Below, in pieces: positions 5,360 to 60,051 of a DNA stretch of 64,000 nucleotides. The first letter of the stretch is position 1. Each line of letters opens with the position of its first letter. The notes below the pieces were generated by a model. That model was not told the DNA's origin and did no database searches. It was given only the letters and a program-made list of their open reading frames with translations. The stretch covers positions 248,124,001 through 248,188,000 of the forward strand of contig CM075977.1 of the NCBI GenBank assembly GCA_038087875.1, given 5' to 3'. Both the position numbers and the translations under genes were made by a program. The stretch is from Malacoraja senta. Taxonomy: Eukaryota.

Positions 5360-8103
5360 GAAAAGACAGGCAGGTGGGCAGAGGGGGTGGGGTAGCTCTG
5401 TTGGTGAAGAATGAAATTCAGTCCCGAGAGGGGTGACATAGAATCAGGAGATGTAGAGTCAGTATGGATAGAACTGAGGAATTGTAAGGGTAAAAAGACC
5501 CTAATAGGACTTATCTACAGGCCCCCAAACAGTAGCCTGGATATAGGATGCAAATTGAATCGAGAGTTAAAATTGGCATGTTGTAAAGGTAATACTACGA
5601 TTTTTATGGGGGATTTCAACATGCAGGTAGACTGGGTAAATCAGGTTGGTACAGGGAACCAAGAAATGGAGTTTGTGGAGTGCTTCCGTGATGGATTCTT
5701 AGAGCAGCTTGTACTGGAGCCTACCAGGGAGAAGGCAACTCTGGATTTAGTGTTGTATAATGAACCGGATTTGATAAGGGAACTTGAGGTTAAGGAGTCA
5801 TTAGGAGGTGGTGGCCTTAATATGATAAGTTTTAATCTACAATTTGAGAGGGAGAAGGGTAAATCGGAGGTGCCAGTATTACAGTTCAACAAAGGGGACT
5901 ATGGAGCCATGAGGGAGGAGCTGGCCAAAGTTGACTGGAAAGATACCCTAGCAAGGATGACATTGGAACAACAATGGCAGGTATTTCTGGGATTAATACA
6001 GAAGGTGCAGGATCAGTTCATTCCAAAGAGGAAGAAAGATTCCAAGGGGAGTAAGGGGCAACCGTGGCTAACAAGGGAAGTCAGGGACAGTATAAATATA
6101 AAAGAGAGGAGGTACAACATGGCAAAGATGAGCGGGAAGACAGAGGATTGGGTAATGTTTAAAGGGCAACAGAAGATAACTAAAAAGGCAATACGGGGAG
6201 AAATGTTGAGGTACAAAGGGAAGCTAGCCAAGAATATAAAGGAGGATAGTAACAGCTGCTTTAGGTATGGGAAGAGCAAAAAATTAGTTAAGACCCAAGT
6301 TGGACCCCTGAAGACTGAAAAGGGTGAATTTATTATGGGGAACAAGGAAATGGAAGATGAGTTGAACAGGTACTTTGGATCCATCTTCACTTAGGAGGAC
6401 ACAAACCATCTTCCTGGTGTACGAGTGGACAGAGGATCTGGGGTGATGGAGGAACTGAAGGAAATCCACATTAGGCAGGAAATGGTGTTGGGTAGACTGA
6501 TGGGACTAAAGGTTGATAAATCCCCAGGGCCTGATGGTCTGCATCCCAGGGTACTTAAGGTAGTGGGTCGAGAAATCGTGGACGCATTGGTGATCATTTT
6601 CCAATGTTCTATAGATTCAGGATCAGTTCCTGTGGATTAGAGGGTAGCTAATGTTATCCCACTTTATAAGAAAGGTGGGAGAGAGAAAACAGGGAATTAT
6701 AGACCAGTTAGCCTGACATCAGTGGCGGGGAAGATGCTGGAGTCAATTATAAAAGATGAGATAGCCGCACATTTGGATAGCAGTAACAGGATTGGTCCGA
6801 GTCAGCATGGATTTACGAAGGGGAAATCATGCTTGACTAATCTTCTGGATTTTTTTGAGGATGTAACTAGGAAAATGGACAAGGGAGAGCCAGTGGATGT
6901 AGTGTACCTGGACTTTCAGAAAGCATTTGATAAGGTCCCACATAGGAGATTAGTGGGCAAAATTAGGGCACATGGTATTGGGGGTAGGGTGCTGACATGG
7001 GTAGAAAATTAGTTGGCAGACAGGAAACAAAGAGTAGGGATTAACGGGTCCATTTCAGAATGGCAGGCAGTGACTAATGGGGTACCGCAAGGCTCGGTGC
7101 TGGGAACGCAGTTATTTACAATATATATTAATGATTTAGATGAAGGGATTACAAGTAACATTAGCAAATTTGCAGATGACACAAAGCTGGGTGGCAGTGT
7201 GAACTGTGAGGAGGATGCTATGAGAATGCAGGGTGACTTGGACAGGTTGGGTGAGTGGGCAGATGCATGGCAGATTCAGTTTAATGTGGATAAATGTGAG
7301 GTTAGCCACTTTGGTAGCAAAACAGGAAGGCAGATTATTATCTAAATGGTGTCAAGTTGGGAAAAGGGGAAGTACAACGGGATCTGTGGGTCCTTGTTCA
7401 TCAGTCAATGAAAGTAAGCATACAGGTACAGCAGGCAGTGAAGAAAGCGAATGGCATATTGGCCTTCTTAACAAGAGGAGTAGAGTATCGGAGCAAAGAG
7501 GTCCTTCTGCAGTTGTACAGTGCCCTAGTGAGACCACACATGGAGTACTGTGTGCAGTTTTGGTCTCCAAATTTGAGGAAGTACATTCTTGCTATTGAGG
7601 GAGTGCAGCGTAGGTTCACAAGGTTAATTCCCGGGAGGGCGGAATTGTCATATGCTGAGAGAATGGAGCAGCTGGGCATGTTCACTCTGGAATTTAGGAT
7701 GAGAGGGGATCTTATTGAAACATATAAGATTATTAAGGGTTTGATCACGCTAGAGGCAGGAAACATGTTCCCGGTGTTGGGGGAGTCCAGAACCAGGGAC
7801 CACTGTTTAAGAATAAGGGGTAAGCCATTTACAACGGAGATGAGGAAACACTTTTTCACACAAAGAGTAGTGAGTCTGTGGAATTCTCTGCCTCAGAGTG
7901 CGGTGGAGGCCGGTTCTCTGGATACTTTCAAGAGAGAGCTAGATAGGGCTCTTAAAGATAGCGGAGTCAGGGGATATGGGGAGAAGGTAGGAACGGGGTA
8001 CTGATTGTGGATGATCAGCCATGATCACATTGAATGACGGTGCTGGCTCAAAGGGCTGAATGGCCTACTCCTGCACCTATTATCTATTGTTTATTGTCTA
8101 TTG
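5360..8103 (+). mobile_element. CR1 LINE, 5'-truncated (part of endonuclease plus RT), pseudogenised
   Basis: YRPPN and MGDFN (APE endonuclease); [33 protein letters not shown] (RT); several stops; (TATTGTC)n tail. Confidence 0.95.
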
Positions 8104-8465
8104 TACACAATTAATGGTGAGTCTCAATTGATGTACGGGGGAGGGGGGGGGGGGTGGGCTTGTGATCCAAGTGCATTGCTCCCTGAAAGTGGAAACACAA
8201 GTAGAAATGGTAGTAAAAAAATGTAAGATATGATCACTTTCACTCCATTCCCCCTCATCCCTCATTCCCCCTACATTTCATTAAATATTAGAGTCATGAA
8301 ATCATGGTGCAGTTCTAAAAGACTTTGATTAGACCACATTTGACATATTGCATGCAATTCTGGTCACCCCATTACAGGAAGGATGTGGAGGCTTTGGAGA
8401 GGGTGCAGAAGAGGTTTACCAGAATGTTGCCTGGATTAGATGTAATAGTTATATGGAGTGTATGG

Positions 8466-10353
8466 GGAGAAAAGATGAGGTACGAAGGTAAGCTAGCCAA
8501 GAATATGAAGCAGGATAGTAACAGCTTCTTTAGGTATGTGAAGAGGAAAACATTAGTTAAGACCAAAGTTGGACCCTTGAAGACCGAAAAAGGTGAATTT
8601 ATTATGGGGAACAAGCAAATGGCAGATGAGTTGAACAGGTACTTTGGATCTGTTTTCACTAAGGAGGACACAAACAATCTTCCTGATATAGTAGTGGCCA
8701 GAGGATCTGGGGTGACAGAGGAACTGAAGGAAATCCACATTAGGCAGGAAATGGTGTTGGATAGACTGATGGGACTGAAGGCTGATAAATCCCCAGGGCC
8801 TGATGGTTTGCATCCCAAGGTACTTAAGGAAGTGGCTCTAGAAATCGTGGATGAATTGGTGATAATTTTCCAATGATCTATAGACTCACGATCAGTTCCT
8901 GTGGATTGGAGGGTAGCTAGTGTTATCCCACTTTTTAAGAAAGGCGGGAGAGAGAAAACGGGGAATTATAGACCAGTTAGCCTGACATCGGTGGTGGGGA
9001 AGATGCTGGAGACAATTATAAAAGATGAGATAGCCGCACATTTGGATAGCAGTAACAGGATCGGTCTGAGTCAGCATGGATTTACGAAGGGGAAATCATG
9101 CTTGACTAATCTTCTGGAATTTTTTGAAGATGTAACTAGGAAAATGGACAATGGAGAGCCAGTGGATGTAGTGTACCTGGACTTTCAGAAAGCATTTGAT
9201 AAGGTCCCACAGAGGAGATTAGTGGGCAAAATTAGGGCACATGGTATTGGGGGTAGAGTGCTGTCATCGATAGAGAAGTGGTTGGCAGACAGGAAAGAGT
9301 AGGGATTAACGGGTCCCTTTCAGAATGGCAGGCAGTGACTAGTGGGGTACCACAAGGCTCGGTGCTGGGACCGCAGCTATTTACAATATACATCAATGAT
9401 TTGGATGAAGGGATTCAAAGTAACATTAGCAAATTTGCAGATGACACTGGGTGGCAGTGTGAACTGCGAGGAGGATGCTATGAGAATGCAGGGTGAATTG
9501 GACAGGTTGGGGGAGTGGGCAGATGCATGGCAGATGAAGTTTAATGCGGATAAATGTGAGGTTATCCACTTTGGTAGCAAAAACAGGAAGGCAGATTACT
9601 ATCTAAATGTCGTCACGTTGGGAAAAGGGGAAGTACAACGGGATCTGGGGGGCCTTGTACATCAGTCTATGAATGTAAGCATGCAGGTACAGCAGGCAGT
9701 GAAGAAAGCGAATGGCATGTTGCCCTTTATAACAAGAGGAATCGAATATAGGAGCAAAGAGGTCCTTCTGCAGTTGTACAGTGCACTAGTGAGACCACAC
9801 GTGGAGTATTGTGCGCAGTTTTTGTCCCCTAATTTGAGGAAGGACATTCTTGCTATTGAGGGAGTACAGCGTAGGTTTACAAGGTTAATTCCCGGGATGG
9901 CGGGACTGTCATATGCTGAGAGAATGGATCAGCTGGGCTTGTACACTCTGGAGATTAGAAGGATGAGAGGGTATCTCATTGAAACATATAAGATTGTTGA
10001 GGGCTTGGACACACTAGAGGCAGGAAATATGTTCCCGATGTTGGGGGAGTCCAGAACCAGGGGCCACAGTTATAGAATAAGGAGTAAGCCATTTAGAACG
10101 GAGACGAGGAAACACTTTTTCTCACAGAGAGTGGTGAGTCTGTGGAATTCTCTGCCGCAGAGGGCGGTGGAGGCAGGTTCTCTGAATGCTTTCAAGAGAG
10201 AGCTAGATAGGGCTCTTAAAAATAGCTGAGTCAGGGGCTATGGGGAGAAGGCAGGAACGGGGTACTGATTGGGGACAATCAGCCATGATCACATTGAATG
10301 GCGGTGCTGGCTCAAAGGGCCAAATGGCCTACTCTTGCACCTATTGTCTATTG
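8466..10353 (+). mobile_element. CR1 LINE, 5'-truncated
   Basis: Same RT motifs in ORFs 8325-10229 with frameshifts; tail ctattgtctattg. Confidence 0.95.
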
Positions 10354-10477
10354 CACACTTTTCATTCTGATGGATCACAATCTCAAATGTCATCTAACAT
10401 CAGACAAGGGTCCCGGCCTGAAAGGTCGTCTGTCCATTCCCTCCGCTGGTGCTGCCTGAACCATTGAGTTCTAATAT

Positions 10478-12216
10478 GACAATAGACAATAGACAATAGG
10501 TGCAGGAGTAGGCCATTCGGCCCCATTGAGCCAGCACCGCCATTCAATGTGATCATGGCTGATCATCCCCAATCAGTAACCCGTTCCTGCCTTCTCCCCA
10601 TATCTCCTGACTCTGCTATTTTTAAGAGCCCTATCTAGCTCTCTCTTGAAAGCATCCAGAGAACCTGCCTCCACTGCCCTGTGAGGTAGAGAGTTCCACA
10701 GACTCATCACTCTCTGTGAGAAAAAGTGTTTCCTCGTCTCCGTTCTAAGTGGCTTACTCCTTTTTCTTAAACTGTGGTCCCTGGTTCTGGACTCCCCCAA
10801 CATCGGGAACATGTTTCCTGCCTCTAGCGTGTCCAAACCCTTAACAATCTTATATGTTTCAATGAGATGCCCTCTCATCCTTCTAAACTCCAGAGTGTAC
10901 AAGCCCAGCTGCTCCATTCTCTCAGCATATGACAGTCCCGCCATCCCGAGAATTAACCTTGTAAACCTGCACTGCACTCCCTCAATAGCAAGAATGTCCT
11001 TCCTCAAATTAGGGGACCAAAACTGCACACAATACTCCAGGTGTGGTCTCACTAGGGCTCTGTACAACTGCAGAAGGACCTATTTGCTCCTATATTCGAT
11101 TCCTCTTGTTATATAGGCCAACATGCCATTCGCTTTCTTCACTGCCTGCTGTACCTGCATGCTTACATTCATAGACTGATGTACAAGGACCCCCAGATCC
11201 CGTTGTACTTCCCCTTTTCCCAACGTGACGACATTTAGATAGTAATCTGCCTTCCTGTTTTTGCTACCAAAGTGGATAACCTCACATTTATCCGCATTAA
11301 ACTTTATCGGCCAAGCATCTGCCCACTCCCCCAACCTGTCCAAGTCACCCTGCATTCTCATAGCATCCTCCTCACAGTTCACACTGGCACCCAGCTTTGT
11401 GTCATCTGCAAATTTGCTAATGTTACTTTGAATCCCTTCATCCAAATCATTGATGTATATTGTAAATAGCTGCGGACCCAGCACCGAGCCTTGCGGTACC
11501 CCACTAGTCACTGCGTACCATTCTGAAAGGGACCCATTAATCCCTACTCTTTGTTTCCTGTCTGCCAACCAATTCTCTATCCATGTTAGCACTCTACCCC
11601 CAATACCATGTGCCCTAACTTTGCCCACTAATCTCCTATGTGGGACCTTATCAAATGCTTTCTGAAAGTCCAGGTACACTACATCCACTGGCTCTACCTC
11701 GTCCATTTTCCTGGTTACATCTGCAAAAAATTTCAGACGATTAGTCAAGCATGATTTCACCTTCGTAAATCCATGATGACTCGGACCAATCCTGTTACTG
11801 CTATCCAAATGTGCAGCTATTTCATCTTTTATAATTGACTCCAGCATCTTCCCCACCACCGATGTCAGGCTAACTGGTCTATAATTCCCTGTTTTCTCTC
11901 TCCCGCCTTTCTTAAAAAGTGGGATAACATTAGCTACCCTCCAATCCACAGGAACTGATCCTGAGTCTATAGAACATTGGAAAATGATCACCAATGCATC
12001 CACGATTTCTAGAGCCACTTCCTTAAGTACCCTGGGATGCAGACCATCAGGCCCTGGGGATTTATCAGCCTTCAGTCCCATCAGTCTATCCAACACCATT
12101 TCCTGCCTAATGTGGATTTCCATCAGTTCCTCCGTCACCCCAGATCCTCTGGCCACTACTATATCAGGAAGATTGTTTGTGTCCTCCTTAGTGAAGACAG
12201 ATCCAAAGTACCTGTT
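10478..12216 (-). mobile_element. CR1 LINE, 5'-truncated, inverted relative to the previous copy
   Basis: Minus-strand ORFs 11080-12429 and 10573-11067 carry CR1 RT motifs; tail (gacaata)n at 10478-10498. Confidence 0.95.
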
Positions 12217-12422
12217 CCTCCAGCATTTTGTGTTTTTCTCAAGGTTCAAGCATCTTCGGTTCCTTGTGTCTTGAATTTTATGTAATTGAATTGGATTCAG
12301 ACGTGAAACAAGCTCCAAAGAAAAACAAAACGATAGACACAAAATGCTAGAGTAACTCATTCGATCAGGCAGTACCTCTGGAGAGAAGGAATAGAACGTT
12401 TTGGGTCGATACCCTTCATCGG
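12217..12422. mobile_element. Two decayed Penelope pLTR-derived fragments in opposite orientations; degenerate hammerhead at 12395-12422 (-)
   Basis: ctccagcattttgtgt on +; ccgatgaagggtatcgacccaaaacgtt on -. Confidence 0.6.
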
Positions 12423-13912: not shown

Positions 13913-14112
13913 NNNNNNNNNNNNNNNNNNNNNNNNNNNNNNNNNNNNNNNNNNNNNNNNNNNNNNNNNNNNNNNNNNNNNNNNNNNNNNNNNNNNNNNN
14001 NNNNNNNNNNNNNNNNNNNNNNNNNNNNNNNNNNNNNNNNNNNNNNNNNNNNNNNNNNNNNNNNNNNNNNNNNNNNNNNNNNNNNNNNNNNNNNNNNNNN
14101 NNNNNNNNNNNN
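13913..14112. other. Assembly gap (200 N)
   Basis: Run of N. Confidence 1.
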
Positions 14113-30139: not shown

Positions 30140-30962
30140 TTTTTATTTTTATTTTTTATTTTAATTTTATTAGAAGTTAATACAATACAAAACAATACTG
30201 TGGTACCTAATTTTAGGTGCCAACTATGTCATAACGTAATACATTCTATGTACAACCTCTAGTTTTATGTTTTTGAAAAGGAAGTAAAAAAAAAAAAAAA
30301 TAGAGAGAAGAAAAAGAGGAAAAATAGATAGTAGAAAATAGAAGAACGTGAAGTGTGTATATAAGAAAAGAAAAAGTAGAAAGTAGAAATAGTAGAAAAA
30401 GGCCCTTAAAATAGAAATTTTCAAATCTTTGTTCGGAGATGTAAATCTATCCACGACCTGACCTGAAATCAGTAATCTTTACGGTACTGCTGCATCACAT
30501 GATTCCAAAAAGTCGATGAAAGGGGACCAACTCCTTAAGAATTGGTCATATTTATCTATTAGGCGGAGTCTCATTTCTTCAAGGTGTGCTATGTCCGTCA
30601 TATTCCTAATCCACATTTTAATAGTTGGTATAGCTGTATTTTTCCAAAATTTAAGTACCAATTTCTTTCCAATTATTAACCCATAATTAAAGAATACTTT
30701 TTGGTCTTTGTTTAAATTGATATCTTCTACTATTATTCCAAATATAATCCATTCCGTATTAGGTTCTATTCTTGACTTGAAGAGCTTTGTAAATATATCA
30801 AATATATCGCTCCAAAATTTATTCAACTTTATACATCCTACGAATGAATGTGTTATATTGGCATTCTGAAACAAACATTTATCGCATCTGGGAGAGACGT
30901 TTGGGTAGAATTTATTCAACCTCGTTTTTGAATAATATAGCCTATGTAATAATTTAAATTAT
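30140..30962 (-). mobile_element. L1-clade LINE 3' fragment
   Basis: ORF 30479-30919 with CDKC..H..C zinc knuckle; A-rich tail (T-rich on +). Confidence 0.9.
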
Positions 30963-31669
30963 TAATGCATTTTTTCTGATTGCATTTATGTACTGAGCCC
31001 AGGACAGGTCATCCGATGTTTTCGCCCAGGAATTTGAAGCTGGTAACTCTCTTCACCACGGCACCGCCATGAAAACTGATGTGTGGTCTCCTGATTTCCC
31101 CTTTCTGAAGGAAATGATTAATTCCTTGGTCTTGTTGATGTTGAGCGAGGGGTTGTTGGTGCGGCACCACTCAACCAGGAGTTGTTTCTCTCTCCTGCAG
31201 GTTGACTCATCAGCATGTCGTGGTCTCCTTTGTGAATTTGTAGATGACATGGGAGCTGTGTTTAGCTGCACAGTCATGGCTGTAAAGCTATTAGGACAAC
31301 GGGTAAAGCAAGCAGCCTTGAGGTGCACCTGGGTAGTAAGAAGGAGAGTTTAAGAAGGAACTGCAGATGCTGGAAAATCAAAGGTAGACAAAAGTGCTGG
31401 AGAAACTCAGCGGGTGCAGCAGTATCTAGTAAGAAGGAGATGTTGTTCTAACTTCATAGTAAGAAGGAGATGTTGTTACCGATCCACACTAATTGAGGTC
31501 TGCCAATTTGGATCCAGTTGCAAATTATACCCTACAAGTAAACAGAATCTGCCAGTCCAATTTAGTCTGGTTTAAAACTGACTCCCATACAAAACAGTGG
31601 TACTGGTTCAAAAAGTTTGTAGAGCAATGATAGGGAATGAACGAACCTCAGGGATTTCCACTGGACCTA

Positions 31670-32967: not shown

Positions 32968-33374
32968 TCTGAGCAAGTAGAGACATTGGTGAGTTTACTT
33001 CGTAATTGCATCAATGTGCTGGGCTCAGGACAGATCATCAGAGATGTGCATGCCCAGGAATTTGCGGTGTTGACTCTCTCCAGCACTATCATTTTTAACT
33101 TTGGTCGCAATATGTTCTATTTGCACGTTGCACTGCAGAACCTCACTGTGGCATCATCAACAGCAGCCTCAAATCTCTTAACCTCTACTGCCTTGAATAC
33201 CAAGGATAAAAGGAGCATGGGAACACCATCAGCAAGTTCCTCTCCATCATATTCCCTGGAAATCTATTCATCTTTCATCTTTAGTCAAAAATCATAAAAC
33301 AACCTATTTTCTCAATTGCTCAACACAGTTTCCCAGTTTGCTCAACACAGTTTTCTTACGGTCAAGTTGAGTTA

Positions 33375-34386
33375 ATATCATATTTGTATAATATTATCTT
33401 AAATGTAGAAATACCATCTACGGAGGGTATCAGAAGAGACTGGGAACAAGAGTTAGCTATTAACATTTCAAAGGAAAGTTGGAATGAACACTTATTAAAC
33501 GTGCATAAATGTTCGATTAATGTAAGACACACTTTAATACAATTTAAAATTTTACATAGATTATATTATTCCAAAACTAAAATTCATAACATTTTCCCAA
33601 ATGTATCATCTATTTGTGATAAATGTCAATCCCAAGAAGCTACTATAGCGCACTTATTCGTTTTCTGTACAAAAATTCAAAAAGTTTGGAATGAAATTTT
33701 TGAAATCTTTACAAAATTATTTAAAATAAGACTGATACCCAAAGCAGAATGGATTATCTTCGGAATAACGGAAGATGGTCCAGAACTAAATGTGTTTCAA
33801 AAGAAACTAATAGACTATGGGTTAATAACTGGAAAAAAGCTAATTCTAAAATTTTGGAAGAAGGCTCCAATACCAACTATAAACATGTGGATTTCAAATA
33901 TGTTTGAAACATTACACCTAGAAGAGATAAGACTCCTCCTAGCAGGTAAACCAGATCACTTCCACCTGACGTGGTCTGCATTTATAGAATTATTACAAAC
34001 ATAGGGTGCAAAGGTACCTTAAAAAAAATTGAGGTCAGGTAAGGGGGGATGATAGTTGAAGAGTTGGTATGTCCCATTTGCGTAATGCTCATAAAAAATA
34101 TTTGTTTCTCTCTTTTTCCTCTTTCTCTTTCTCCTTCTTTTCTAGGGTCTATTTCTTAACTCTTTTTCTTTTGTTTTTAATTTTGTTCTTATAGGGTCTT
34201 CGTCCTTTTTTGTTGTCACATTTTCTACACTCTCACTTTTTCCTTCACTTTCTTCTTTCTTTCAATCTTATCTTTTCCTTTTACTAGTGTAAAAAACAAA
34301 TGGAGTACATTAATTGTAAGAAGACATAAGTGACGAGTACTAATGTATGTGGTTGTAATGTAATGTACTTCTAATAAATAAAAAAT
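33375..34386 (+). mobile_element. L1-clade LINE 3' fragment, same family as 54339-56794
   Basis: ORF 33384-34004 is nearly identical to the C-terminus of ORF 54334-56334; same 3'UTR. Confidence 0.95.
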
Positions 34387-35510
34387 TAAATTAATTTTGT
34401 ATTGCTAGAGATAGTTACATCACATTGAATAATAAAAACAAGGTGCTATACTGTGTGCAGTTTTTTGCTGATATGTTATTTTTCTGATAGGCAAGCTAAG
34501 TCATTGAAATTTTTTTATGAAACTCACAAATTGCCAGAGCTCCATCAAGAAAGATCATCGAGAGTAAATTGTCACAGGTTGTCGGCATTGAGCAATTCTT
34601 TTGTTTACAATGCATTCGTGTGGTCAAATTACTGCACTAAATTTGAATTTTCACTTTTTTGTTCCAGTTATTGCTTTAACATCTCCACCCACATTTAAGA
34701 TAAAATTGGAAGGGTGGTTTACACAATGTAATACACTGAATTGTACACATTCAGCCTCCGGGAAAAGCCCTGCAGGTCTTTCAGATTAGTTGGAGAAGAT
34801 GTTCCTTTAAATATATTTCTCTCCTATTCTATATTCTCTCCTTTAATGACCACAAAATAAAAATACATACTATTGCCTAATGGCAGCATCAGGTTAAGTC
34901 TAACAAAAGCTAAGTGATGCATGCAGCTGTGACTAGTCTTTGCTGATGGTAAAGGAGGTCAATGTTAGTATAACCAGTCTTAGTACCTTATGCTTAGAGA
35001 AATGGAAACCATGAAAACATTGCATGCTGGTATAACCAAACTAAACATCCAAAACTGGCCTGTTCACTCACCATCTCAATTTTAAAATTATTATCCCTTT
35101 TCAAGTCCCTTCCTTGTTTTGCAACTTCTCCAACCAGAACCTTATAATCAGCCAAGATAACTGGTGTACTCCATTTCTAGCCATTTGATTACCTTGGAAT
35201 GTATTCTCTACATTACTGGTAGCCCAACCTTCAGATGCTCAAACCCTAAATCTGGAATTCCTTCCCTAAAGTCCTACACCTCGGTATTTCATTTAATTCC
35301 TTTCGGATGCTCATTAAAACCCATTTATTTGATGATTTGTATCAATGTTGTCATATGCACACATTGCACACTGCAATGCACCACCTACCCTCAAGATCTG
35401 CAATTACCAAGTCCTCCAACAGCTTCACAACATTACAATTGTCCATATTACCATCACTCCGACATGAACCTCTCCAAAACACAATACGCCATTCTCTGAT
35501 CCTCAAACAT

Positions 35511-41490: not shown

Positions 41491-41830
41491 GGACTACAGA
41501 TGGCGCAATGGGCTAAGTGTTCGGCTGGCAACCGGAAGGTAGCCGGTTTGAATCCCGCTTGGAGTGCATACTGTCGTTGTGTCCTTGGGCAAGACACTTC
41601 ACCCACCTTTGCCTGCGTGTGAATGTGTGTGAGTGATTGGTGGTGGTCGGAGGGGCCGTAGGCGCAGATTAGCAGCCACGCTTCCGTCAGTCTGCCCCAG
41701 GGCAGCTGTGGCTACGGAAGTAGCTCACCACCACCGAGTGTGACTGAGGAATGAATGAATAATGCGATGTAAAGGGCCTTGAGTATTAGAAAGGCGCTAT
41801 ATAAATCCCATCCATTATTATTATTATTAT
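41491..41830 (+). mobile_element. Full-length tRNA-derived SINE with L2-type tail (teleost AFC-like)
   Basis: A-box tggcgcaatgg, B-box ggtttgaatccc, CORE-like gtgtccttgggcaagacactt, tail tgtaaag..gcgctatataaat, (ATT)n; flanking duplication. Confidence 0.85.
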
Positions 41831-44800
41831 ATGCAAGTACATCATATGCAAGTACATCAAGGTAGTGCATGAGAGCAAAAGAAACATAATATTTAATATA
41901 GTGTTACAGCTACAGGGAAAGTGCAGATATAAAAAAATCTGCAAGGGTCGCAACGAGGTGATTTGCAAGCTGCAAGGGTCTGAGCTATAGGGAGAGATTG
42001 AGTAGGCTGGGACTCTATTCCCTGGAGCGCAGTTATTATTGTAATGTAGTGTTGCCTGACAATCCTAAATAAGAACAGAGATATCCATTTGTATCAAAAA
42101 TTAGAAATATCCAGGATCAACTAGGAATTATATAGATGCTAAAGAGACGATAATTTATGGGAATTCAAAGAAAGGTCGGGACTAGGAAGCTCTATTATTT
42201 TTTTGCAGAGACTTAATGGTTTGAATAGCTTCTTTCTGTGACATAACAATTCCATGATTCAAAACTTCATATCTATCCTTTCCTGCATCCAACTCCATTA
42301 ATGGAAGCAGTTTTCAGTCACCTTGGTGTTTACCAATCAAATTTCACAAAGATAACTATCTCAGAAATCCTGAACTGACTACAAATACTTTGAGATGTCC
42401 TGCAGTTGTGAAATGTGGTAAATAAACTGAGCCAAATGTTCGTAGAGGCTCTTTCTTTCACCATACTCCAACTAACCCAACAATCACCCTGAAACTACCT
42501 GCCTCAAATATGTTTAGGAAGCCTTCCGTTATATAATTAAAAATAGAATGTTGTAATTGGATAACATTATAACTCTGCTTTAGAGCCACATTGTGCTAGA
42601 GGAACTCTATTTTCCTCAATTCAGTCAGAAGTAAAAATAGACTGTTCTAGGGTGCAGGTTGATTATATAAAAGTATATTTTTATAAATGAATTCCAGGTT
42701 GAGACCCACTGTATGCAATGCTTCAGTTTACAGTATTTCATTGTCTATGATCTCACTGAAATTCATGGTGATACTCAAAAGATGGAGTTAGATAAATCCG
42801 GACACACAGTGATAAACATTTGAGATAGGCAATAAAATATACAATGCACCTTACAAAATGAATATGAAGTTGTCTTTCAGTTTGAGTAGATCTAAAAGCT
42901 GGATGATTGAAAACAAATATATTATTTGATCCAGTTTTGTCTTTATCTGGCACAAGCCATACAATGACCAACAGAGGTTAGGTGTGCCTTGGTGGTGTGC
43001 GTGAATATACAAACATGAATGTGAGAATAAAGCAGGCAGTGACATTTTCTTTCCGATCCTTTGCAGCTTATTACTACTTCAGTTGCCAAAAAGGCAGAAA
43101 TACATCTTTTGCAACCACTGTATCTCCCAGGTTTTTTTCCCATCAATGACTCTCACAAACCACGGTGACTAAGGGAAATGAACTTGAGTTTATATTTATA
43201 TTTGCAGGTTGCTCTGTACCCCCTTCTCTCTCTCTCTCAAGGTTAGTGGTGGGTGTGTTTCCAATGCCCAGCTGTCTCTTGAACGCTGTCGGTATGTGTC
43301 TTGAACCCTTGCAATGATGTATGAAGGGAATGAGACTCAAATTCCTAATGTTTGAGGGATGGACAAGCATCAGGTACTGAAATCTATTGGGTGGGGTGGA
43401 CAAGGGCTTGATCCAGGGTGCCCTGTGGAGGGAAGGATGCTGTTAATTGATTTTCATTAAGAATCAGTTTCTTAATTTTAGAAAAAATTTCAAAATTCAG
43501 AAGTATTTTATAAGCGAGAGTCTCAATCCATGACTACAAGATGGTGATGTGACCGTAAGATTGTTTGCCTGCTTGGATCTGTCCTGACATAAAAAGTAGT
43601 TATTGGTCACATGCTAGGATTTTGTACACAGCTCTAATCAGATGCAAGCTAATGAGTGGCATATTGTAGCGCACATTTATCTGATTCTCATGGTCTTTCA
43701 GTAATTACAAGCCCAATCTCCAACAGCTTAATCAATGGACTTGGTCGGTAATAAAATTCAAGATCAATACATTTAAAAGGAGATTGAGAAGTGTTCTAAA
43801 GACACAAGGCCTACAAATGCTGGAATCTTGAGCAAAACACAAAATGTTGGAGGAACACAGAGGGTCAGGCGCCTGAGCCATACCACTGGCTCTGTAATTT
43901 TCACGCTTTAGGTGGGTTAATTTGCACATTTAATCCACTATTTAATACCAACACACCACTGAAGTTTGAACAGTTACATTATTTTGCACTTCAGCTGCTG
44001 GTTAATGGGGAAACTGTGTGAAGTGGAAATGTACTTGCAGTAAAAACCTAACCATATTACGGAAGAGCCAGAGGTAGAATCATAAAGGAACTGGAACTGG
44101 CACAACATGCTTGTCTGTTGTTTCCTAACAGGCAGATAGTAAAAGAATGTGGTTACCTGACAAATATGCTTCATATAAATTAAGAACTGCTGTTACACCC
44201 TCGGGATCACATAGTTTTTGTGCTATTTTATGAAAGAAGATGGAATTGATTCATCTCTCGTGGAAAGCGTCGTAGCTTGTTATCGTTCAAACCCCGTGGC
44301 AATTTAAATCTACGTATTCATTGTAAAGCAATGTATTATTTGAAGTATCATATTGGCTGCAGCACATTGCATGTGTTAAAATAAAACATAACTGATGCAA
44401 CTCTAAATGACACATCGCAGCAAGTTCTAACAAAGCATTAAAATATTAGCATTAAATATTTAATTACTTTTATGAGATTTTTTAAAAAGGGGTTGTTAAT
44501 TGGTACCTGATTTTTCTAATCATTAGGCATTTTAAAACTACAAGAATGTAGATAACTGCAAGTGTGATTGGATCTGTAAGGACATATTATTGACTGTCAT
44601 TGCTTGGAGGATGGGTGATGTATCTATTATCCTCCAGTCAGGATGCAAGAACCTGGTTTAGCCATGGATTGTGGGTGAGTCCATTTTGCATGTTGGCATT
44701 TTATGGATCGCTTCTCAAAAAAAGAGCCCAAATGCCCACTAAGAACAATGCCCCCTACAAAAATGGCAACAAAAACCGCATAAACACGTTAAGTGGAATG

Positions 44801-52765: not shown

Positions 52766-53554
52766 ATGATCCAATGCCTTGCATCCATAGGTACTACAAG
52801 AAGTTTCTGTAGATAGAGTGGTGCACTGTTTATAATCTTTCAAATTTCCTTCGAATCTGTAAATTTGGAGATAACAAATTTCATCCACCTTTATGGGATA
52901 ACTAAAAATACTAAACTATAGGTGCATTAGCCTGAAATATGTCACTTGAAAAGCACCACAGTTTAAAAATTATAACATAATCAGGCAGAGTCAAAATAAT
53001 TTAATGAAAGAAAAATAGTATTTGGCAAATTTACTAGAGGTCTTTAAGAATCTAATGAGCAGGCTGAATAGAGGATGTCAGTTAATTGGGTGTATTTGGA
53101 TTTCCAGAAGGCATATTTTCCATATAAAAGATCACAACACATGGTAATCCCATGTGGCATTGAGGCTAATATATTAGTATGAAAAATAGTTCACTAGCAC
53201 AGAGAGTGAGGATAAATGGATCCTTTTCAAGTTGGCAAGCTATAACTAGTCAGGTACCAAAGGTATCAGTGCCAGCTACAGTACTTACCATCTGTGTTAA
53301 TGACTTAGATGAAGGGACCAAGTATACTGTCGCCACATTTGTTGATGATACAATAGGTGGGTTAGCAAATTGTGAGGAGAAATAAAACAATCTGCAAAAG
53401 AATATAGATAGGTTAAGCAAATGGGGGAAAAGATTATTTGTTGGTGTGCAACATGTAGATTAGTCCACTTTGGTAGAAAGAATGAAAAAAAAACATAGTA
53501 CTATTTAAATGAAGAGGTACGGAACACTGCTCAGAGAGGGCTCTGAGTCCCTAC

Positions 53555-54338
53555 ATATGTTAAATGCAGAAATACAAAGGGTAATTGAGATAATAAATGG
53601 AATGTATAGCAAAGCACATGAAATTTCAAAGTAGAGCTGTTTTGCCAAAACTGAATGAAGTATTAATAGTTCTGGTCTCATTTAAGGAGGAGACAGTTCA
53701 GAGAAGGGCTACTAGATTCCTGGGATATAGACATGAGAAAAGGTTGAACAGGTTGGACTTGTATTCAACGGAGCTCAGGAGAATGAGCATTTTTACCAAA
53801 ACACACAAAATTCACACAGAATGATTTCCGAATTGGGAGATTAGTTTCAGAATAAGGAATAATGGATAACCCATTTAAGATGTAGATGAGAAGGAACTTC
53901 TCCTATCAGAGGGAGGAGAATATTTTATGTTCTGCACCCGGAAAGATGCAATGGGGTATTATAATAATGAATGATAATGGATGGGATTTATATAGCGCCT
54001 TTCTAATACTCAAGGCGCTTTACATCGCATTATTCATTCACTCCTCAGTCACACTCGGTGGTGGTAAGCTACTTCTGTAGCCACAGCTGCCCTGGGGCAG
54101 ACTGACGGAAGCGTGGCTGCTAATTTGCGCCTACGGCCCCTCCGACCACCACCAATCACTCACACACATTCACACACATTCACACACATTCACACACATT
54201 CACACGCAGGCAAAGGTATACTCATTATACTCAATGATACGGGGTATTATACTCAATTAATATAAATAGAGCTGAGATATGAAAGAATTTTGATCTATGA
54301 GGGAGTCAAGGTTTATAGGAAAGAGATATAAAAGTGTA
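53555..54338 (+). repeat. Left copy of 784-bp direct duplication
   Basis: Matches 56795-57578 at offset 3240; I see two mismatches (54101 a/g, 54300 a/t). Confidence 0.95.
53958..54217 (-). mobile_element. 5'-truncated copy of the AFC-like SINE (duplicated at 57198-57457)
   Basis: Reverse complement of about 41605-41830 with an expanded (cacacatt)n tract. Confidence 0.9.
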
Positions 54339-56334
54339 TCAAGAATTATCAATTATTTCGCTGGATGCTGAAAAAGCATTTGATCAAGTAGAATGGAATT
54401 ATATGGATAAAGTATTACAAAAATTTCAACTGGGAGAGAATTTTATTTTATGGATTAAGTTACTATATAACAAACCTACAGCTAGAATACTTACTAATAA
54501 CATATTATCCTCGAAATTTCAACTATCAAGGGGAAATAGACAAGGATGCTCATTATCACCACAGCTGTTTGCTCTCATTATTGAACCGCTAGCAGAAAAA
54601 ATTAGAATACACCCTGATATTCATGGACATAATACTAAAGACTCATATAATAAAATATCTTTATACGCGGATGATATATTATTGTATATTACAAAACCTC
54701 AAATCACTATACCAAATATATTAAATTTAATTGAAGACTTCGGATCTTTTTCTGGACATAGAATAAATTGGAATAAAAGTGAAATTATGTCAATAAAACC
54801 GAAAGATTCAACACATCTTTTAAAATTCCATTTTAAAATAGCTACAGAAAAATTTAAATATTTGGGAATCGAAATTACCAGAACATATCAAGGTATGTTC
54901 AGGGCAAATTTTGACCCCCTACTTAATAAACTAAATACATTAATTAAATTCTGGAAAACGCTCCCGATGTCTTTAATAGGCCGAATAAACGCAATAAAAA
55001 TGATCTTTTTACCACAAATTTTATACCTATTTCAATCAATTCCTATATACTTACCTAAGAAGTTTTTTAAAAAACTCGACTCAGATATCACTAATTTTAT
55101 ATGGGACTATAAATCACATAGAATACAAAAAACCCACCTGAATAAACCTAAAGTATTGGGGGGTCTAGCACTACCTAATTTTATGTATTATTATTGGTCA
55201 GTAAATATTAAAAACATGATTCAACTGATGGATAACTCCGCCCAGCAAGTAGACTGGATTGTAATGGAGAAAGAGGATTGCTCCTCTAGAAACATTGGAG
55301 CGATCCTCCTCTCTCCAATGAAACTGAATAACATAAATTATAATAAGAACCCAATTATTCATAGTACAATCCGTATTTGGAAACAAATAAAACAAAATTT
55401 AAAATTAAGAAACTTATCACTTTTATTACCTATAGTCAATAACCCTTCGTTTAGTCCTTCTATTATAGATAAAGCTTATACACAATGGGATAGACTAGGA
55501 ATTAAAACGCTTGGTGACTTGTATGAAACTGGAAAATTACTTTCATTTCAACAATTACAAATAAAATATAAACTCGGAAATAATCAATATTTTAAATATT
55601 TTCAAATATGCGACTATTTGAAAAAATATACAAAAGATCATTATAATAATCCAGTAGATGTATTGGACGAGGCAATGCAGATAAAAGCGGAATCAGCAAA
55701 CTTAATATCATATTTGTATAATATTATTTTAAATGTACAAATACCACCTACGGAGGGTATCAGAAGAGACTGGGAACAAGAGTTAGCTATTAAAATTTCA
55801 AAGGAAAGTTGGAATGAATACTTATTAAACGTGCATAAATGTTCGATTAATGTAAGACACACTTTAATACAATTTAAAATTTTACATAGATTATATTATT
55901 CGAAAACTAAAATTCATAAAATTTTCCCAAACGTATCATCTATTTGTGATAAATGTCAATCCCAAGAAGCAACTATAGCGCACTCATTTGTCTTCTGTAC
56001 AAAAATTCAAAAATTTTGGAATGAAATTTTTGAAATCTTTACAAAGTTATTTAAAACAAGACTGATACCCAAAGCAGAATGGATTATCTTCGGAATAACG
56101 GAAGATGATCCAGAACTAAATGTGTTTCAAAAGAAATTAATGGACTATGGGTTAATAACTGGAAAAAAGCTAATTCTAAAATTTTGGAAGAAGGCTCCAA
56201 TACCAACTATAAATATGTGGATTTCAAATATGTTTGAAACATTACACCTAGAAGAGATAAGACTCCTCCTAGCAGGTAAACCAGATCACTTCCACCTGAC
56301 GTGGTCTGCATTTATAGAATTATTACAAACATAG
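54339..56334 (+). CDS. Partial L1 ORF2 (RT plus C-terminal zinc knuckle); lacks the endonuclease and a true start codon
   Basis: SLDAEKAFDQV, RQGCSLSP, YADD, KYLG, CDKC..H..C; the predicted GTG start lies in flanking DNA. Confidence 0.85.
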
Positions 56335-56794
56335 GGTGCAAAAGTACTTTAAAAAAAATAAAAAATTGAGGTCAGGTAAGGGGGGATGATAGTTGAAGAG
56401 TTGGTATGTCCTATTTACGTGATGCTCAAAAAAAAAACATTTGTTTCTCTTTTTTTCTCTTTCTCTTTTCTTTTCTTAGGGCCTATTTCTTAACTCTTTT
56501 TCTTTTTGTTTTTAATTTCGCTCTTATAGGGTCTTCGTCCTTTTTTGTTGTTACATTTTCTACACTTTTCTACACTTGCACTTTTTCCTTCACTTTCTTC
56601 TTTCTTTCAATCTTTTCCTTTTCTAGTGTAAAAAAATAAATAAAGGGAGTACATTAATTGTAAGAAGATATAAATGACGAGTATTAATGTATGTGGTTGT
56701 AATGTAATGTACTTCTAATAAATAAAAATAAAAAAAATAAAAAAATAAAAATAAAATAAAAATTAAAAAAAAATAAAAAAAAAAATTAAAAAAA
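54339..56794 (+). mobile_element. Young 5'-truncated L1-clade LINE with long A-rich tail
   Basis: Uninterrupted frame to 56334; 3'UTR; AATAAA then A-rich tail at about 56717-56794. Confidence 0.96.
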
Positions 56795-57578
56795 ATATGT
56801 TAAATGCAGAAATACAAAGGGTAATTGAGATAATAAATGGAATGTATAGCAAAGCACATGAAATTTCAAAGTAGAGCTGTTTTGCCAAAACTGAATGAAG
56901 TATTAATAGTTCTGGTCTCATTTAAGGAGGAGACAGTTCAGAGAAGGGCTACTAGATTCCTGGGATATAGACATGAGAAAAGGTTGAACAGGTTGGACTT
57001 GTATTCAACGGAGCTCAGGAGAATGAGCATTTTTACCAAAACACACAAAATTCACACAGAATGATTTCCGAATTGGGAGATTAGTTTCAGAATAAGGAAT
57101 AATGGATAACCCATTTAAGATGTAGATGAGAAGGAACTTCTCCTATCAGAGGGAGGAGAATATTTTATGTTCTGCACCCGGAAAGATGCAATGGGGTATT
57201 ATAATAATGAATGATAATGGATGGGATTTATATAGCGCCTTTCTAATACTCAAGGCGCTTTACATCGCATTATTCATTCACTCCTCAGTCACACTCGGTG
57301 GTGGTAAGCTACTTCTGTAGCCACAGCTGCCCTGGGGCAGGCTGACGGAAGCGTGGCTGCTAATTTGCGCCTACGGCCCCTCCGACCACCACCAATCACT
57401 CACACACATTCACACACATTCACACACATTCACACACATTCACACGCAGGCAAAGGTATACTCATTATACTCAATGATACGGGGTATTATACTCAATTAA
57501 TATAAATAGAGCTGAGATATGAAAGAATTTTGATCTATGTGGGAGTCAAGGTTTATAGGAAAGAGATATAAAAGTGTA
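56795..57578 (+). repeat. Right copy of 784-bp direct duplication
   Basis: Begins directly after the L1 tail; identical ORF calls (53597/56837 and 53886/57126). Confidence 0.95.
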
Positions 57579-58033
57579 GCTGAGACCAAGATCAAAACAA
57601 CCATGATGTTATGGAATGGTGGAGCAGGCTCAAGTAGCCATTCCTGTTCTTTTATGTCCTTATACACTTATTAACTCAGGGGTAAGATAATACCTTCTTT
57701 AGTTGTCAATCAATTCAAATTATTGCACAGAATAAATATTGCATACAGCAAGAATTACAGGGCTCAACAATATCCCAGCTAAGGAACTGATGATATATTC
57801 TGCAGATAAGAACCACGTCTCCAACCAAACTGTTACAGTATGGACACAACAAAGGCTTTTACCCAACAGTATAGAAAATCCACAGCAAGATCACATCCAT
57901 GGGTTGTATACATCCAGTCCAATCACTTTTCATTATATCAGCCTCTGCCAATCAGTAAATTATAACAAGGACGGGTCACACAGCCACCCAGCTCTGTGTC
58001 ATCTGCAAACTTGGAGATGTTACACTTAATTCC

Positions 58034-59005
58034 TATATTAACGATTTAGACGAAGGAATGTAACATATCCAAGTTTGCAGATGACACAAAGCTGGGTGGC
58101 TGAGTGAGCTGCGAGGAGGATGCTATGAGGCTGCAGGGTGACTTGGATAGGTTGGGTGAGTGGGCAGATGCATGGCAGATGCAGTATAATGTGGATAGGT
58201 GTGAGGCTATCCTCTTTAGTGGCAAGAACAAGAAGGCAGATTATTATCCGGATGGTGTCAGATTAGGAAAAGGGGAGGTGCAACAAGACCTGGATGTCCT
58301 TGTATATCAGTCACTGAAAGTAAGCATGAAGGTACAGCCGGCAGTGAAGAAAGCAAATGGCATATTGGCCTTCATGGCAAGAGGATTTGAGTATAGGAGC
58401 AAGGAGGTTCTACTGCAATTGTACAGGGCCCTAGTGAGACCACACCTGGAGTATTAGGTACAGTTTTGATCTCCTAATTCGAGGAAGGACATTCTTGCTA
58501 TTGCGGGAGTGCAGCGTAGGTTCACCAGGTTAATTCCCGGGATGGCGGGACTGACAAATGATGAAAGAATGGATCGACTGGGCTTGTATTCACTGGAATT
58601 TAGAAGGATGAGAGGGGATCTTATAGAAACATATAAGATTCTTAAGAAATTGGACAGGCTAGATGCAGGAAAAATGTTTCCGGTGTTAGGGGAGTCCAGA
58701 ACCAGGGGTCACAGTTTAAGAATAAGGTGTAGAACATTTAGGACCGAGAAGAGGAAAACGTTTGCACCCAGAGAGTTGTGAATCCGTGGAATTCTCTGCC
58801 ACAGAAGGCAGTGGAGGCCAATTCACTGGTTGTTTTCAAGAGAGAGTTGGATATAGCTCTTAGTGCTAACATAATCAAGGGATATGGGGAAAAAGCAGGA
58901 ACGGGGTATTGATTTCGGATGATCAGCCATGATCATATTGAATGGCGGTGCTGGCTCGAAGGGCTGAATGACCTACTCCTGCACCTGTTTTCTATATTTC
59001 TATGT
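58034..59005 (+). mobile_element. CR1 3' fragment with an inverted duplicate at its 5' junction
   Basis: FADDTK, LQGDLDRLGEWA, RPHLEY; tail tttctatatttctatg. Confidence 0.95.
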
Positions 59006-60051
59006 TAAGGGTATTTATAGATAATGTGGTTACTGGTCATGACCTTGGATCCATCAAAGCCATCTGAGTCTGGAACTCATAAAAGCCTTGATACTCATAA
59101 AAGCCTTGATTTAAGCTGGGATAGAACAGTTGAATTCCAGTGGTGGGATGGTGGATGTTCATGACACTGTGGCAGTACTTGAGGAAATGTAGTCCCAAGA
59201 AACCCTCATAAGATGGGGATCAAGTAAATGGCTTTTCCATTGCAAGTCTGAAAAGGATTGTTGTTAGATGTTGATCATCTTAGACTCATCTATGGTGTTC
59301 CTCGGGAAGGTTCCAAGGTCCAACTACATTTAGGACCATCAACAACCTTTCATGTTGTAAGGTCAAACACATGTTTTAAGATGATTTTATTTTATTGTTC
59401 TTTGAAGTTTGCTTAGCTGCACCCTTTCAAGTCATGATATCGTCCTTCCTTTGCAAAACAAGCAGATTTTACTTGATGGTGCTTCCCAAGGGATCCACAC
59501 AGAAGATGTACCTCAAATGGACAAAACAGGGGATCCATCTGGAGTCACTGATGCAGGTGGTCAGCAGGGACGTGCGGTCAGGGGAGGCAGGGGAGGCAAG
59601 CCTCACCTGTCATACTCCCAACGAAAATAGCTGTTAAGGAAAGTAAAGAAAAATAATAATAAAATAAAATAAATATAAAGACTTTTCCACTGATCTGTGT
59701 TATAAATGTCATTTCTATATGAATCTAATCATTTTTTATAGTAAAAATCGCCAAATTTGCGCAGCTCCGCTGCAAATACAGGGAGAGATGAGAGATGAGG
59801 CAGCGACGAGCTGAGCCTGCCCTCTGATTGCGCAACCCCTCAGAAACTGCATGGAGCACGGGCAATAAGCGTGTGCCTGTTACTATCTCTATGTATGTCA
59901 CCAACTTAATTTGTGTAAACCCCTTCATTACATGTCCTCGCCTTCCATAGTCCAGGTAACTTATTTCACATATAAATATATTAAATTTGTGCTCGCTGAT
60001 CTCACATAAAACTGCAATGAAAAAGCACCAGGGGAGGCAGCGATCACATCT

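What the first reader, a model, noticed from the sequence alone, without database searches (positions are those of the whole stretch)
53555..57578. Young L1 flanked by a 784-bp direct duplication (possible giant TSD)
Seen: 53555-54338 is repeated at 56795-57578 with two visible mismatches, abutting the L1 5' truncation point and the end of its A-rich tail. Removing the L1 and one copy restores a continuous old CR1. Established: L1 TSDs are normally about 7-20 bp and very long ones are rare. Inference: distant second-strand cleavage or repair-associated insertion that duplicated host DNA, including a SINE. An assembly join of filled and empty haplotypes is the main alternative.
Basis: partly seen in the sequence, partly recalled or inferred. 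Interest (0 to 1): 0.7.

Follow-up and report, generated by a model that had tools for sequence, protein, structure and literature searches.

The report
Skate L1 with 784-bp target duplication
A recently inserted, truncated L1 jumping gene in a skate genome sits exactly between two near-identical 784-base copies of its landing site, so the insertion itself most likely duplicated that stretch of old repeat DNA; this outcome is known from human cell cultures, and this scan has already noted more than a dozen similar cases in the same genome.

Summary
53555-54338 and 56795-57578 are the same 784 bases apart from two substitutions, and both ends of the repeat are sharp. One copy abuts the 5' truncation point of an L1. 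The other abuts the last A of the L1's 78-nt A-rich tail. The L1 (54339-56794) keeps an unbroken 666-aa ORF2 remnant that matches human ORF2p residues ~595-1232.

Taking out the L1 and one copy leaves one old CR1 with a nested SINE. That sequence is colinear with another CR1 copy across both junctions. The best reading is a single target-primed insertion whose second-strand break, or a free DNA end, lay 784 bp from the first nick.

An assembly artefact would need a junction that neither haplotype contains, so I rate it unlikely.

Duplications this long are known from HeLa cells, repair-deficient cells and tumours, so the event is not a new kind. The duplicated DNA is only transposon debris.

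The scan found the same geometry before, on other DNA of this genome: at least 13 L1 loci with 163 bp to 2.5 kb repeats. The open and more interesting question is whether this L1 lineage does this habitually.

The parts
53050..53554 (+). P: left flank, degenerate old CR1 reverse-transcriptase region
   Evidence: Conceptual translation shows CR1 RT motifs with stops and frameshifts. tblastx hits other CR1 copies in the window. It is colinear with CR1 copy 58070-58730 across the 53554/53555 junction.
53555..54338 (+). Q copy A: left copy of the 784-bp duplication. It ends exactly at the L1 5' truncation point.
   Evidence: 782 of 784 bases identical to copy B, constant offset 3240, sharp ends.
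53960..54178 (.). SINE nested in the old CR1, inside copy A. The same SINE lies at 57200-57418 in copy B, followed in both by an identical-length 10-nt-period microsatellite.
   Evidence: 96% identical copy at 41614-41831 on the other strand. The microsatellite is in register in both copies.
54339..56794 (+). 5'-truncated young L1, 2456 bp
   Evidence: Pfam RVT_1 E 5e-26. Colinear with human ORF2p residues ~595-1232, E 1e-66. A 92.8% identical older copy of the same family lies at 33372-34384.
54334..56334 (+). Uninterrupted 666-aa ORF2 remnant (RT from mid-domain to the C-terminal CCHC motif). Its first 5 nt lie in Q.
   Evidence: the ORF listing. No stop or frameshift over 2 kb, consistent with a recent insertion.
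56717..56794 (+). A-rich tail (78 nt, 12 T, starts with AATAAA) ending directly against copy B
   Evidence: Sequence read. The older copy shares the 3' UTR up to this point and then has its own short A-rich tail.
56795..57578 (+). Q copy B: right copy of the duplication. It starts directly after the tail and continues into R.
57579..57665 (+). R: right flank, 3' end of the same old CR1
   Evidence: The CR1 anchors TCAAGG (in Q) and CCATGAT (in R) are 55 nt apart here and 52 nt apart in CR1 copy 58875-58927. Q and R are therefore adjacent in the ancestral element.
54101..54101 (+). Mismatch 1 (A here, G at 57341)
   Evidence: The other SINE copy agrees slightly better with copy A (96.8 vs 96.3%), so G in copy B is probably the derived base.
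54300..54300 (+). Mismatch 2 (A here, T at 57540), 39 nt from the right end of Q
   Evidence: I could not tell which base is ancestral.

Best explanation
One L1 retrotransposition event by target-primed reverse transcription duplicated 784 bp of its own target.

Inferred sequence of events:
- The bottom strand was nicked opposite 53554/53555 (top strand ...CCCTAC/ATATGT...).
- The freed 3' end primed reverse transcription on the A-rich tail of an L1 RNA. The cDNA stopped, or was cut off, within the RT-coding region.
- The top strand was then opened 784 bp downstream, at the Q/R boundary (...AAGTGTA/GCTGAG...), instead of about 15 bp away. Alternatively, a free or nascent 3' end already lay there.
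- Q was thus present on both 3' overhangs. Fill-in and ligation gave P-Q-L1-A tail-Q-R.

Shown: the geometry, the identity of the parts, the youth of the event and the continuity of the reconstructed empty site. Inferred: the order of nicks, what made the second break, and how the 784-bp duplex was opened.

I put about 0.8 on a single L1 event that duplicated the target. Within that, I put roughly 0.5 on a distant second nick with fill-in and 0.3 on a replication-linked route.
For: - Exact TSD geometry: the repeat ends abut the L1 5' truncation point and the last A of the tail, with no spare bases.
- P|Q and Q|R are both ancestral joins. Both are colinear with another CR1 copy, and the anchor spacing across Q|R is 55 vs 52 nt.
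- The insert is a true L1 with an A-rich tail.
- Youth: the 666-aa ORF is intact, the copies differ at 2 of 784 positions, and the microsatellite length is identical in both.
- No gap lies near the locus. The only N run is at 13913-14112.
- The outcome is documented. TSDs over 100 bp and up to 6.7 kb occur in human cells, in under 10% of HeLa events and in 57-91% of events in NER-deficient cells (PMC5223499). Extremely long TSDs are linked to 5'-truncated L1 in HeLa (PMC2912911). Tandem duplications of 1-10 kb at L1 insertions are read as large TSDs (bioRxiv 10.1101/2024.12.14.628481).
- Leads only, not tested here: at least 13 other L1 loci with 163 bp to 2.5 kb flanking repeats are noted in this genome.
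Against:
- The first-nick site (top strand AC/ATAT) matches the mammalian L1 endonuclease preference TT/AAAA poorly. The preference of this skate family is unknown.
- No full-length family member is in the window, so microhomology at the 5' junction could not be scored.
- The one other family copy in the window shows no long duplication.
Confidence: 0.8

Rival explanations
1. Assembly artefact: a heterozygous ordinary L1 insertion and its empty allele were stitched together, creating a false second copy of Q.
For: The two substitutions in 784 bp are also what two haplotypes would show. No reads could be laid, so depth and spanning reads are unknown.
Against: An ordinary insertion has either Q-end|L1 with tail|R, or P|L1 with tail|Q-start. 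The assembly shows Q-end|L1 and tail|Q-start together. One of these would have to be invented at base precision, with no overlap to support it. There is no N run within 39 kb, and the window is otherwise contiguous through many repeats. The differences between the copies are substitutions, not the homopolymer indels typical of consensus errors. The same geometry is noted at many loci of this genome, and one earlier follow-up reports related skates with that DNA once and no L1 (s1-140515, not tested here).
Confidence: 0.08
2. The same single L1 event, but the duplication arose by replication rather than by a distant nick. The target-primed intermediate met or sat at a replication fork. A nascent or broken end 784 bp away was then extended (break-induced or bypass replication) and joined to the cDNA.
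For: This is the mechanism proposed for 1-10 kb tandem duplications at L1 insertions in induced-L1 clones and tumours (bioRxiv 10.1101/2024.12.14.628481). A 784-bp duplex between two nicks would not melt on its own, so an active process such as a helicase, strand displacement or replication is needed. The poor match to the endonuclease site at the first nick allows a pre-existing lesion.
Against: The final sequence is the same as for a distant nick with fill-in, so nothing in the window separates the two. The insert has a normal A-rich tail joined to the target, as in ordinary target priming.
Confidence: 0.3
3. Two independent same-orientation insertions of this L1 family, one at P|Q and one at Q|R on different chromatids or alleles, followed by unequal crossover within the L1. 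This gives P-Q-L1-Q-R without any long TSD.
For: It reproduces the geometry exactly. An AT/AAAA-like site lies 9 bp before the end of Q (read) and could have been the first-nick site of the second insertion.
Against: It needs three rare events within 784 bp. The window holds one young copy of this family in 64 kb. The site 9 bp before the end of Q is unremarkable in DNA of 30-37% GC. The scenario would have to recur at every other locus the scan has noted.
Confidence: 0.03
4. An older tandem duplication Q-Q was later hit exactly at its joint by an L1 that made no TSD of its own.
For: None specific. It cannot be excluded formally without an outgroup.
Against: It needs a hit on 1 position out of 784 and a blunt insertion with no TSD. 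The left flank ends exactly at the Q end and the right flank starts exactly at the Q start. At 0.26% divergence the duplication would also have to be as young as the L1.
Confidence: 0.01

Closest known systems
Large-TSD L1 insertions recovered in cultured human cells (HeLa, HCT116; XPA-, XPC- and XPD-deficient lines)
   Same: A polyadenylated, mostly 5'-truncated L1 sits between direct copies of 0.1-6.7 kb of target. 784 bp lies inside that range and below the 1495-bp median of NER-deficient cells (PMC5223499). In HeLa, extremely long TSDs are reported with 5'-truncated inserts (PMC2912911).
   Different: Those are engineered human elements in somatic, often repair-defective cells. This is a natural element in a cartilaginous fish, present in a germline assembly. 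Most of the human events keep a TTTT/A-type first-nick site, whereas this one has ATAT/G on the nicked strand.
L1-associated 1-10 kb tandem duplications in tumours and induced-L1 clones
   Same: The duplication has the L1 at its joint and is regarded as a large TSD (bioRxiv 10.1101/2024.12.14.628481; pan-cancer survey PMC7058536 listed).
   Different: Those events are somatic, usually larger, and inferred from short-read breakpoints. The proposed route is break-induced replication, which cannot be tested here.
LINE families that habitually make long TSDs: Dualen-4b_cRei of Chlamydomonas and R9 of rotifers
   Same: Long duplications are a property of the family. More than half of de novo Dualen-4b insertions carried duplications over 50 bp, with a median of 900 bp. 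R9 makes 126-bp TSDs (PMC9977147).
   Different: These are other LINE clades with other endonuclease arrangements (Dualen has both RLE and APE). A family habit is not shown for this L1 by anything in this window.
Canonical germline L1 insertions
   Same: 5' truncation, A-rich tail, direct repeats flanking the insert and an L1 ORF2.
   Different: The usual TSD is 5-30 bp (PMC5223499), with about 15 bp for human L1. TSD length was reported to depend on the LINE species (PMC4245944). The TSD here is about 50 times longer.

Membership tests
L1-clade LINE | Reverse-transcriptase domain | tested here: met
   Pfam RVT_1 E 5.1e-26, 92 bits against a 29.6 cut-off.
L1-clade LINE | ORF2p colinear with L1 ORF2p beyond the RT (wrist and C-terminal segment), and closer to L1 than to other LINE clades | tested here: met
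   Human ORF2p structures 8sxt, 9k6g and 8uw3 match at E about 1e-66 over query 5-641 and residues 595-1232. R2-type proteins match only at E 1e-7 to 1e-11, over the RT alone.
L1-clade LINE | APE-type endonuclease and ORF1 | tested here: inconclusive
   This copy is 5'-truncated inside the RT, so both regions are absent. No full-length family member is in the window.
L1-clade LINE | A-rich 3' tail | tested here: met
   78 nt, 85% A, at 56717-56794.
[quoted passage not shown] | Direct repeats abut the 5' end and the tail end of the insert exactly | tested here: met
[quoted passage not shown] | Removing the insert and one repeat restores a continuous ancestral sequence | tested here: met
   P-Q and Q-R are colinear with CR1 copy 58070-59060. 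Anchor spacing across Q|R is 55 vs 52 nt.
[quoted passage not shown] | First-nick site fits the endonuclease preference (TT/AAAA on the top strand for mammalian L1) | tested here: inconclusive
   The site is AC/ATAT, a poor fit to the mammalian motif. The preference of this family is unknown, and the other copy in the window has no readable TSD.
[quoted passage not shown] | Empty site in other individuals or species | not testable with these tools
Five runs of other labelled organisms hold 0.38-0.47 of the sampled words, close to the 0.43 expected for flanks and Q without the L1.
Canonical L1 TSD | Length 5-30 bp | tested here: not met
   784 bp.
Large-TSD L1 insertions (over 100 bp) | TSD over 100 bp with an otherwise ordinary tailed L1 insert | tested here: met
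   Range in human cells from PMC5223499.
False duplication in an assembly | Gap or contig end at the duplication, with junctions explainable by overlap of two haplotypes | tested here: not met
   The only N run is at 13913-14112. Both new junctions cannot come from one filled and one empty haplotype (reasoning from the sequence).
False duplication in an assembly | Halved read depth on the copies and no read spanning both | not testable with these tools

The most novel reading that the evidence does not exclude
This skate L1 lineage, or the skate germline that hosts it, habitually separates the second-strand break from the first nick. A sizeable share of its insertions would then carry duplications of 0.1-2.5 kb, sometimes copying exons. 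That would be the first vertebrate germline LINE with long TSDs as a family trait. It would also make many of its insertions reversible without a scar, by recombination between the flanking copies.
Probability: 0.45. Interest if true: 0.75.

Novelty: new member of a known kind. Interest (0 to 1): 0.5.

Why it matters
Taken alone, this locus copies only a dead CR1 and a SINE, so it has no evident effect on a gene. Its value is as one more clean, young, base-precise example of an L1 insertion that duplicated hundreds of bases in a natural germline. That outcome has mostly been documented in cultured or repair-defective human cells and in tumours.

If the many similar loci noted in this genome hold up, three things follow:
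- **Mechanism.** The skate L1 would be a natural system for asking what sets the distance of second-strand cleavage: the element's protein, nucleotide-excision repair, or replication.
- **Gene evolution.** It would be a route to small segmental duplications, including exon duplications.
- **Phylogenetic markers.** Long flanking repeats let an insertion be removed precisely by recombination, which breaks the usual assumption that LINE insertions are irreversible characters.

Tried and rejected
- **Reads.** The look-up of sequencing runs listed 21 runs. The later alignments used pieces that leave them out. One local self-comparison of the whole window inside the sandbox did include them.
- **TSD of the other family copy (33372-34384).** Nothing longer than an 11-nt match, at chance level (E 1.7), between 3-kb flanks. 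Nothing readable at the junctions either, so it says nothing about the family's usual TSD or nick site.
- **5' junction microhomology.** Not scorable, because no family copy in the window covers the truncation point.
- **Large protein searches.** Not used. The protein is plainly L1 ORF2p, and the claim does not rest on absence of relatives.
- **NCBIfam.** Gave only a sub-threshold group II intron RT hit, which is uninformative.
- **Literature.** I found no paper in the held library describing long L1 TSDs in skates or other cartilaginous fishes. This shows only that the library holds none.
- **Rejected readings.** 3' or 5' transduction is rejected because both P|Q and Q|R are ancestral CR1 joins and no second tail follows copy B. 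A tandem Q-Q hit exactly at its joint is rejected as too great a coincidence.
Full report
**Observation**

A repeat search and a base-by-base comparison show that 53555-54338 recurs at 56795-57578. The offset is a constant 3240 with no indel. There are two substitutions: 54101 A vs 57341 G, and 54300 A vs 57540 T. Similarity ends abruptly on all four sides. A local self-comparison of the whole window finds no other direct repeat above 96% identity. The only N run is far away, at 13913-14112.

**What lies between the copies**

54339-56794 carries one unbroken 666-aa reading frame.
- It has a Pfam reverse-transcriptase domain (E 5e-26).
- It is colinear with solved human L1 ORF2p structures over residues ~595-1232 of 1275 (E about 1e-66). 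R2-type proteins match only over the RT, at E 1e-7 to 1e-11.
- A CCHC-type motif lies near its C-terminus (read from the translation).
- After the stop come a 3' UTR and a 78-nt tail that is 85% A and begins with AATAAA.

The element is therefore an L1 truncated inside the RT, on the + strand, with no endonuclease or ORF1. It is dead as an autonomous copy, but undecayed. An older copy of the same family (92.8% identical) lies at 33372-34384 and shares the 3' UTR up to the tail.

**What was duplicated**

Translation of the flanks shows a degenerate CR1 running through P (about 53050-53554) into Q. A SINE interrupts it at 53960-54178; a 96% identical copy lies at 41614-41831. A short microsatellite follows the SINE. 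The CR1 then resumes to the end of Q and continues into R (57579 to about 57665), which is the CR1 3' end.

I aligned these pieces to the next CR1 copy downstream (58070-59060).
- P|Q is crossed without a gap at the junction. Identity is about 52%, and small indels lie about 60 nt upstream.
- Across Q|R, the anchors TCAAGG and CCATGAT are 55 nt apart here and 52 nt apart in the reference copy.

Both P|Q in the left copy and Q|R in the right copy are thus ancestral joins, and the empty site was P-Q-R. The SINE and the microsatellite are identical in length in both copies, so they predate the L1. The duplication is therefore recent.

**Age**

Two differences in 784 bp is 0.26%. At 0.5-2e-9 substitutions per site per year, which is an assumed range, this is roughly 0.6-2.6 million years. 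With only two events the error is wide. The SINE comparison suggests that G at 57341 is the derived base.

**Mechanism**

The arrangement TSD - truncated L1 - A tail - TSD is the signature of target-primed reverse transcription. The steps below are inferred.
1. The bottom strand is nicked opposite 53554/53555.
2. Reverse transcription is primed on the RNA tail, which gives the tail|Q-start junction.
3. The cDNA ends inside the RT-coding region.
4. The top strand is opened at Q|R, 784 bp downstream, or a free or nascent 3' end already lies there.
5. That end joins the cDNA end, which gives the Q-end|L1 junction.
6. Q, now single-stranded on both sides, is filled in.

A 784-bp duplex would not separate unaided, so a helicase, strand displacement or replication must be involved. 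The sequence cannot tell a distant nick with fill-in from a break-induced or bypass-replication route, which has been proposed for such events in human cells. The first-nick site, top strand AC/ATAT, is a poor match to the mammalian TT/AAAA preference. The preference of this family is unknown, and the second copy in the window has no readable TSD.

**Rival readings**

- *Join of a filled and an empty haplotype.* These two haplotypes contain between them only one of the two new junctions. The other would have to be invented at base precision with no overlap to support it. No gap is near, and the copies differ by substitutions rather than homopolymer indels. I rate this at about 0.08. It stays open only because no reads were seen.
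- *Two same-orientation L1 insertions 784 bp apart, followed by unequal crossover.* This would mimic the structure exactly, but it needs three rare events (0.03).
- *A prior Q-Q tandem hit exactly at its joint by an insertion with no TSD.* This is a coincidence of about 1 in 784 on top of a rare duplication (0.01).
- *Transduction.* Excluded, because both outer joins are ancestral and no second tail follows copy B.

**What could not be done**

- The look-up of sequencing runs listed two runs of one organism holding 0.92 and 0.89 of the sampled words. Five runs under other labels hold 0.38-0.47. That is close to the 0.43 expected if a genome holds the flanks and Q but not this L1, so an empty site in relatives is a lead.
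- I worked beside those places afterwards and sent none of their letters, nor those of the identical 57396-57449, to any search tool. Only a sandbox self-comparison of the whole window contained them.
- The organism name is coded. 'Skate' comes from earlier notes of this scan and was not tested here.

**Comparison with what is known**

- In human cells, L1 TSDs are usually 5-30 bp.
- TSDs over 100 bp made up less than 10% of HeLa events, but 57-91% of events in XPA-, XPC- or XPD-deficient cells. The median there was 1495 bp and the maximum 6.7 kb. The authors propose that a distal unrelated nick is used when the nearby second nick fails (PMC5223499).
- Extremely long TSDs in HeLa were tied to 5'-truncated inserts (PMC2912911).
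- Tandem duplications of 1-10 kb at L1 insertions in induced clones and tumours are treated as large TSDs and ascribed to break-induced replication (bioRxiv 10.1101/2024.12.14.628481).
- TSD length can be a property of the LINE species (PMC4245944).
- Family-level long TSDs are known for Dualen-4b in Chlamydomonas (median 900 bp) and R9 in rotifers (126 bp) (PMC9977147).
- I found no paper in the held library on long L1 TSDs in cartilaginous fishes.

This locus is therefore a new natural member of a known kind of event.

**Earlier findings of this scan**

Look-ups show that the same geometry was noted on other DNA of this same genome at least 13 times. The flanking repeats are about 163, 285, 314, 373, 378, 480, 498, 700 and 871 bp, 1.2 kb (twice), 2.4 kb and 2.5 kb. 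Several of these loci have been followed up. One follow-up reports related skates carrying the DNA once with no L1. These are unchecked AI notes and I tested none of them.

The notes do not raise my confidence in this locus's sequence facts. They do make a one-off accident less likely, and they shift the interesting question to whether the lineage or the host habitually makes long TSDs. This window adds only one young copy with a long TSD and one older copy that is uninformative.

**Verdict**

The sub-mechanism is open. The content of the duplication is transposon debris. Interest is moderate for the locus (0.5) and higher for the genome-wide pattern if it is verified.

Noticed in passing
window 57976-58107: A 49-nt inverted repeat (94% complementary, 34-nt spacer) sits at the truncated 5' end of the next CR1 copy (58059 to about 59060, + strand). 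Both arms match one single segment of other CR1 copies (7124-7202). This looks like a foldback or inverted duplication made when that CR1 was inserted.
   Followed up: partly
window 6192-12217: Three CR1-bearing copies of about 1.8-1.9 kb, 91-95% alike. Two are direct (6192-8089, 8461-10353) and one is inverted (12217-10463). They lie just before the only assembly gap (13913-14112).
   Followed up: no
window 56717-56794: The tail of this very young L1 is not pure A. It has 12 T spaced every 3-11 A. With 0.26% divergence this pattern must have been copied from the source transcript rather than acquired by decay. The older copy at 34373-34395 has a different, short A/T tail.
   Followed up: partly
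window 53400-57700: Five sequencing runs filed under other organism labels hold 0.38-0.47 of the sampled words. This is near the 0.43 expected for the flanks and Q without the L1, so it may be an orthologous empty site in relatives. It was never laid.
   Followed up: no
window 30478-30965: A fragment of a second, distant L1 family (68% identical to ORF2 of the young copy) lies on the minus strand, about 2.4 kb upstream of the older L1 copy.
   Followed up: no
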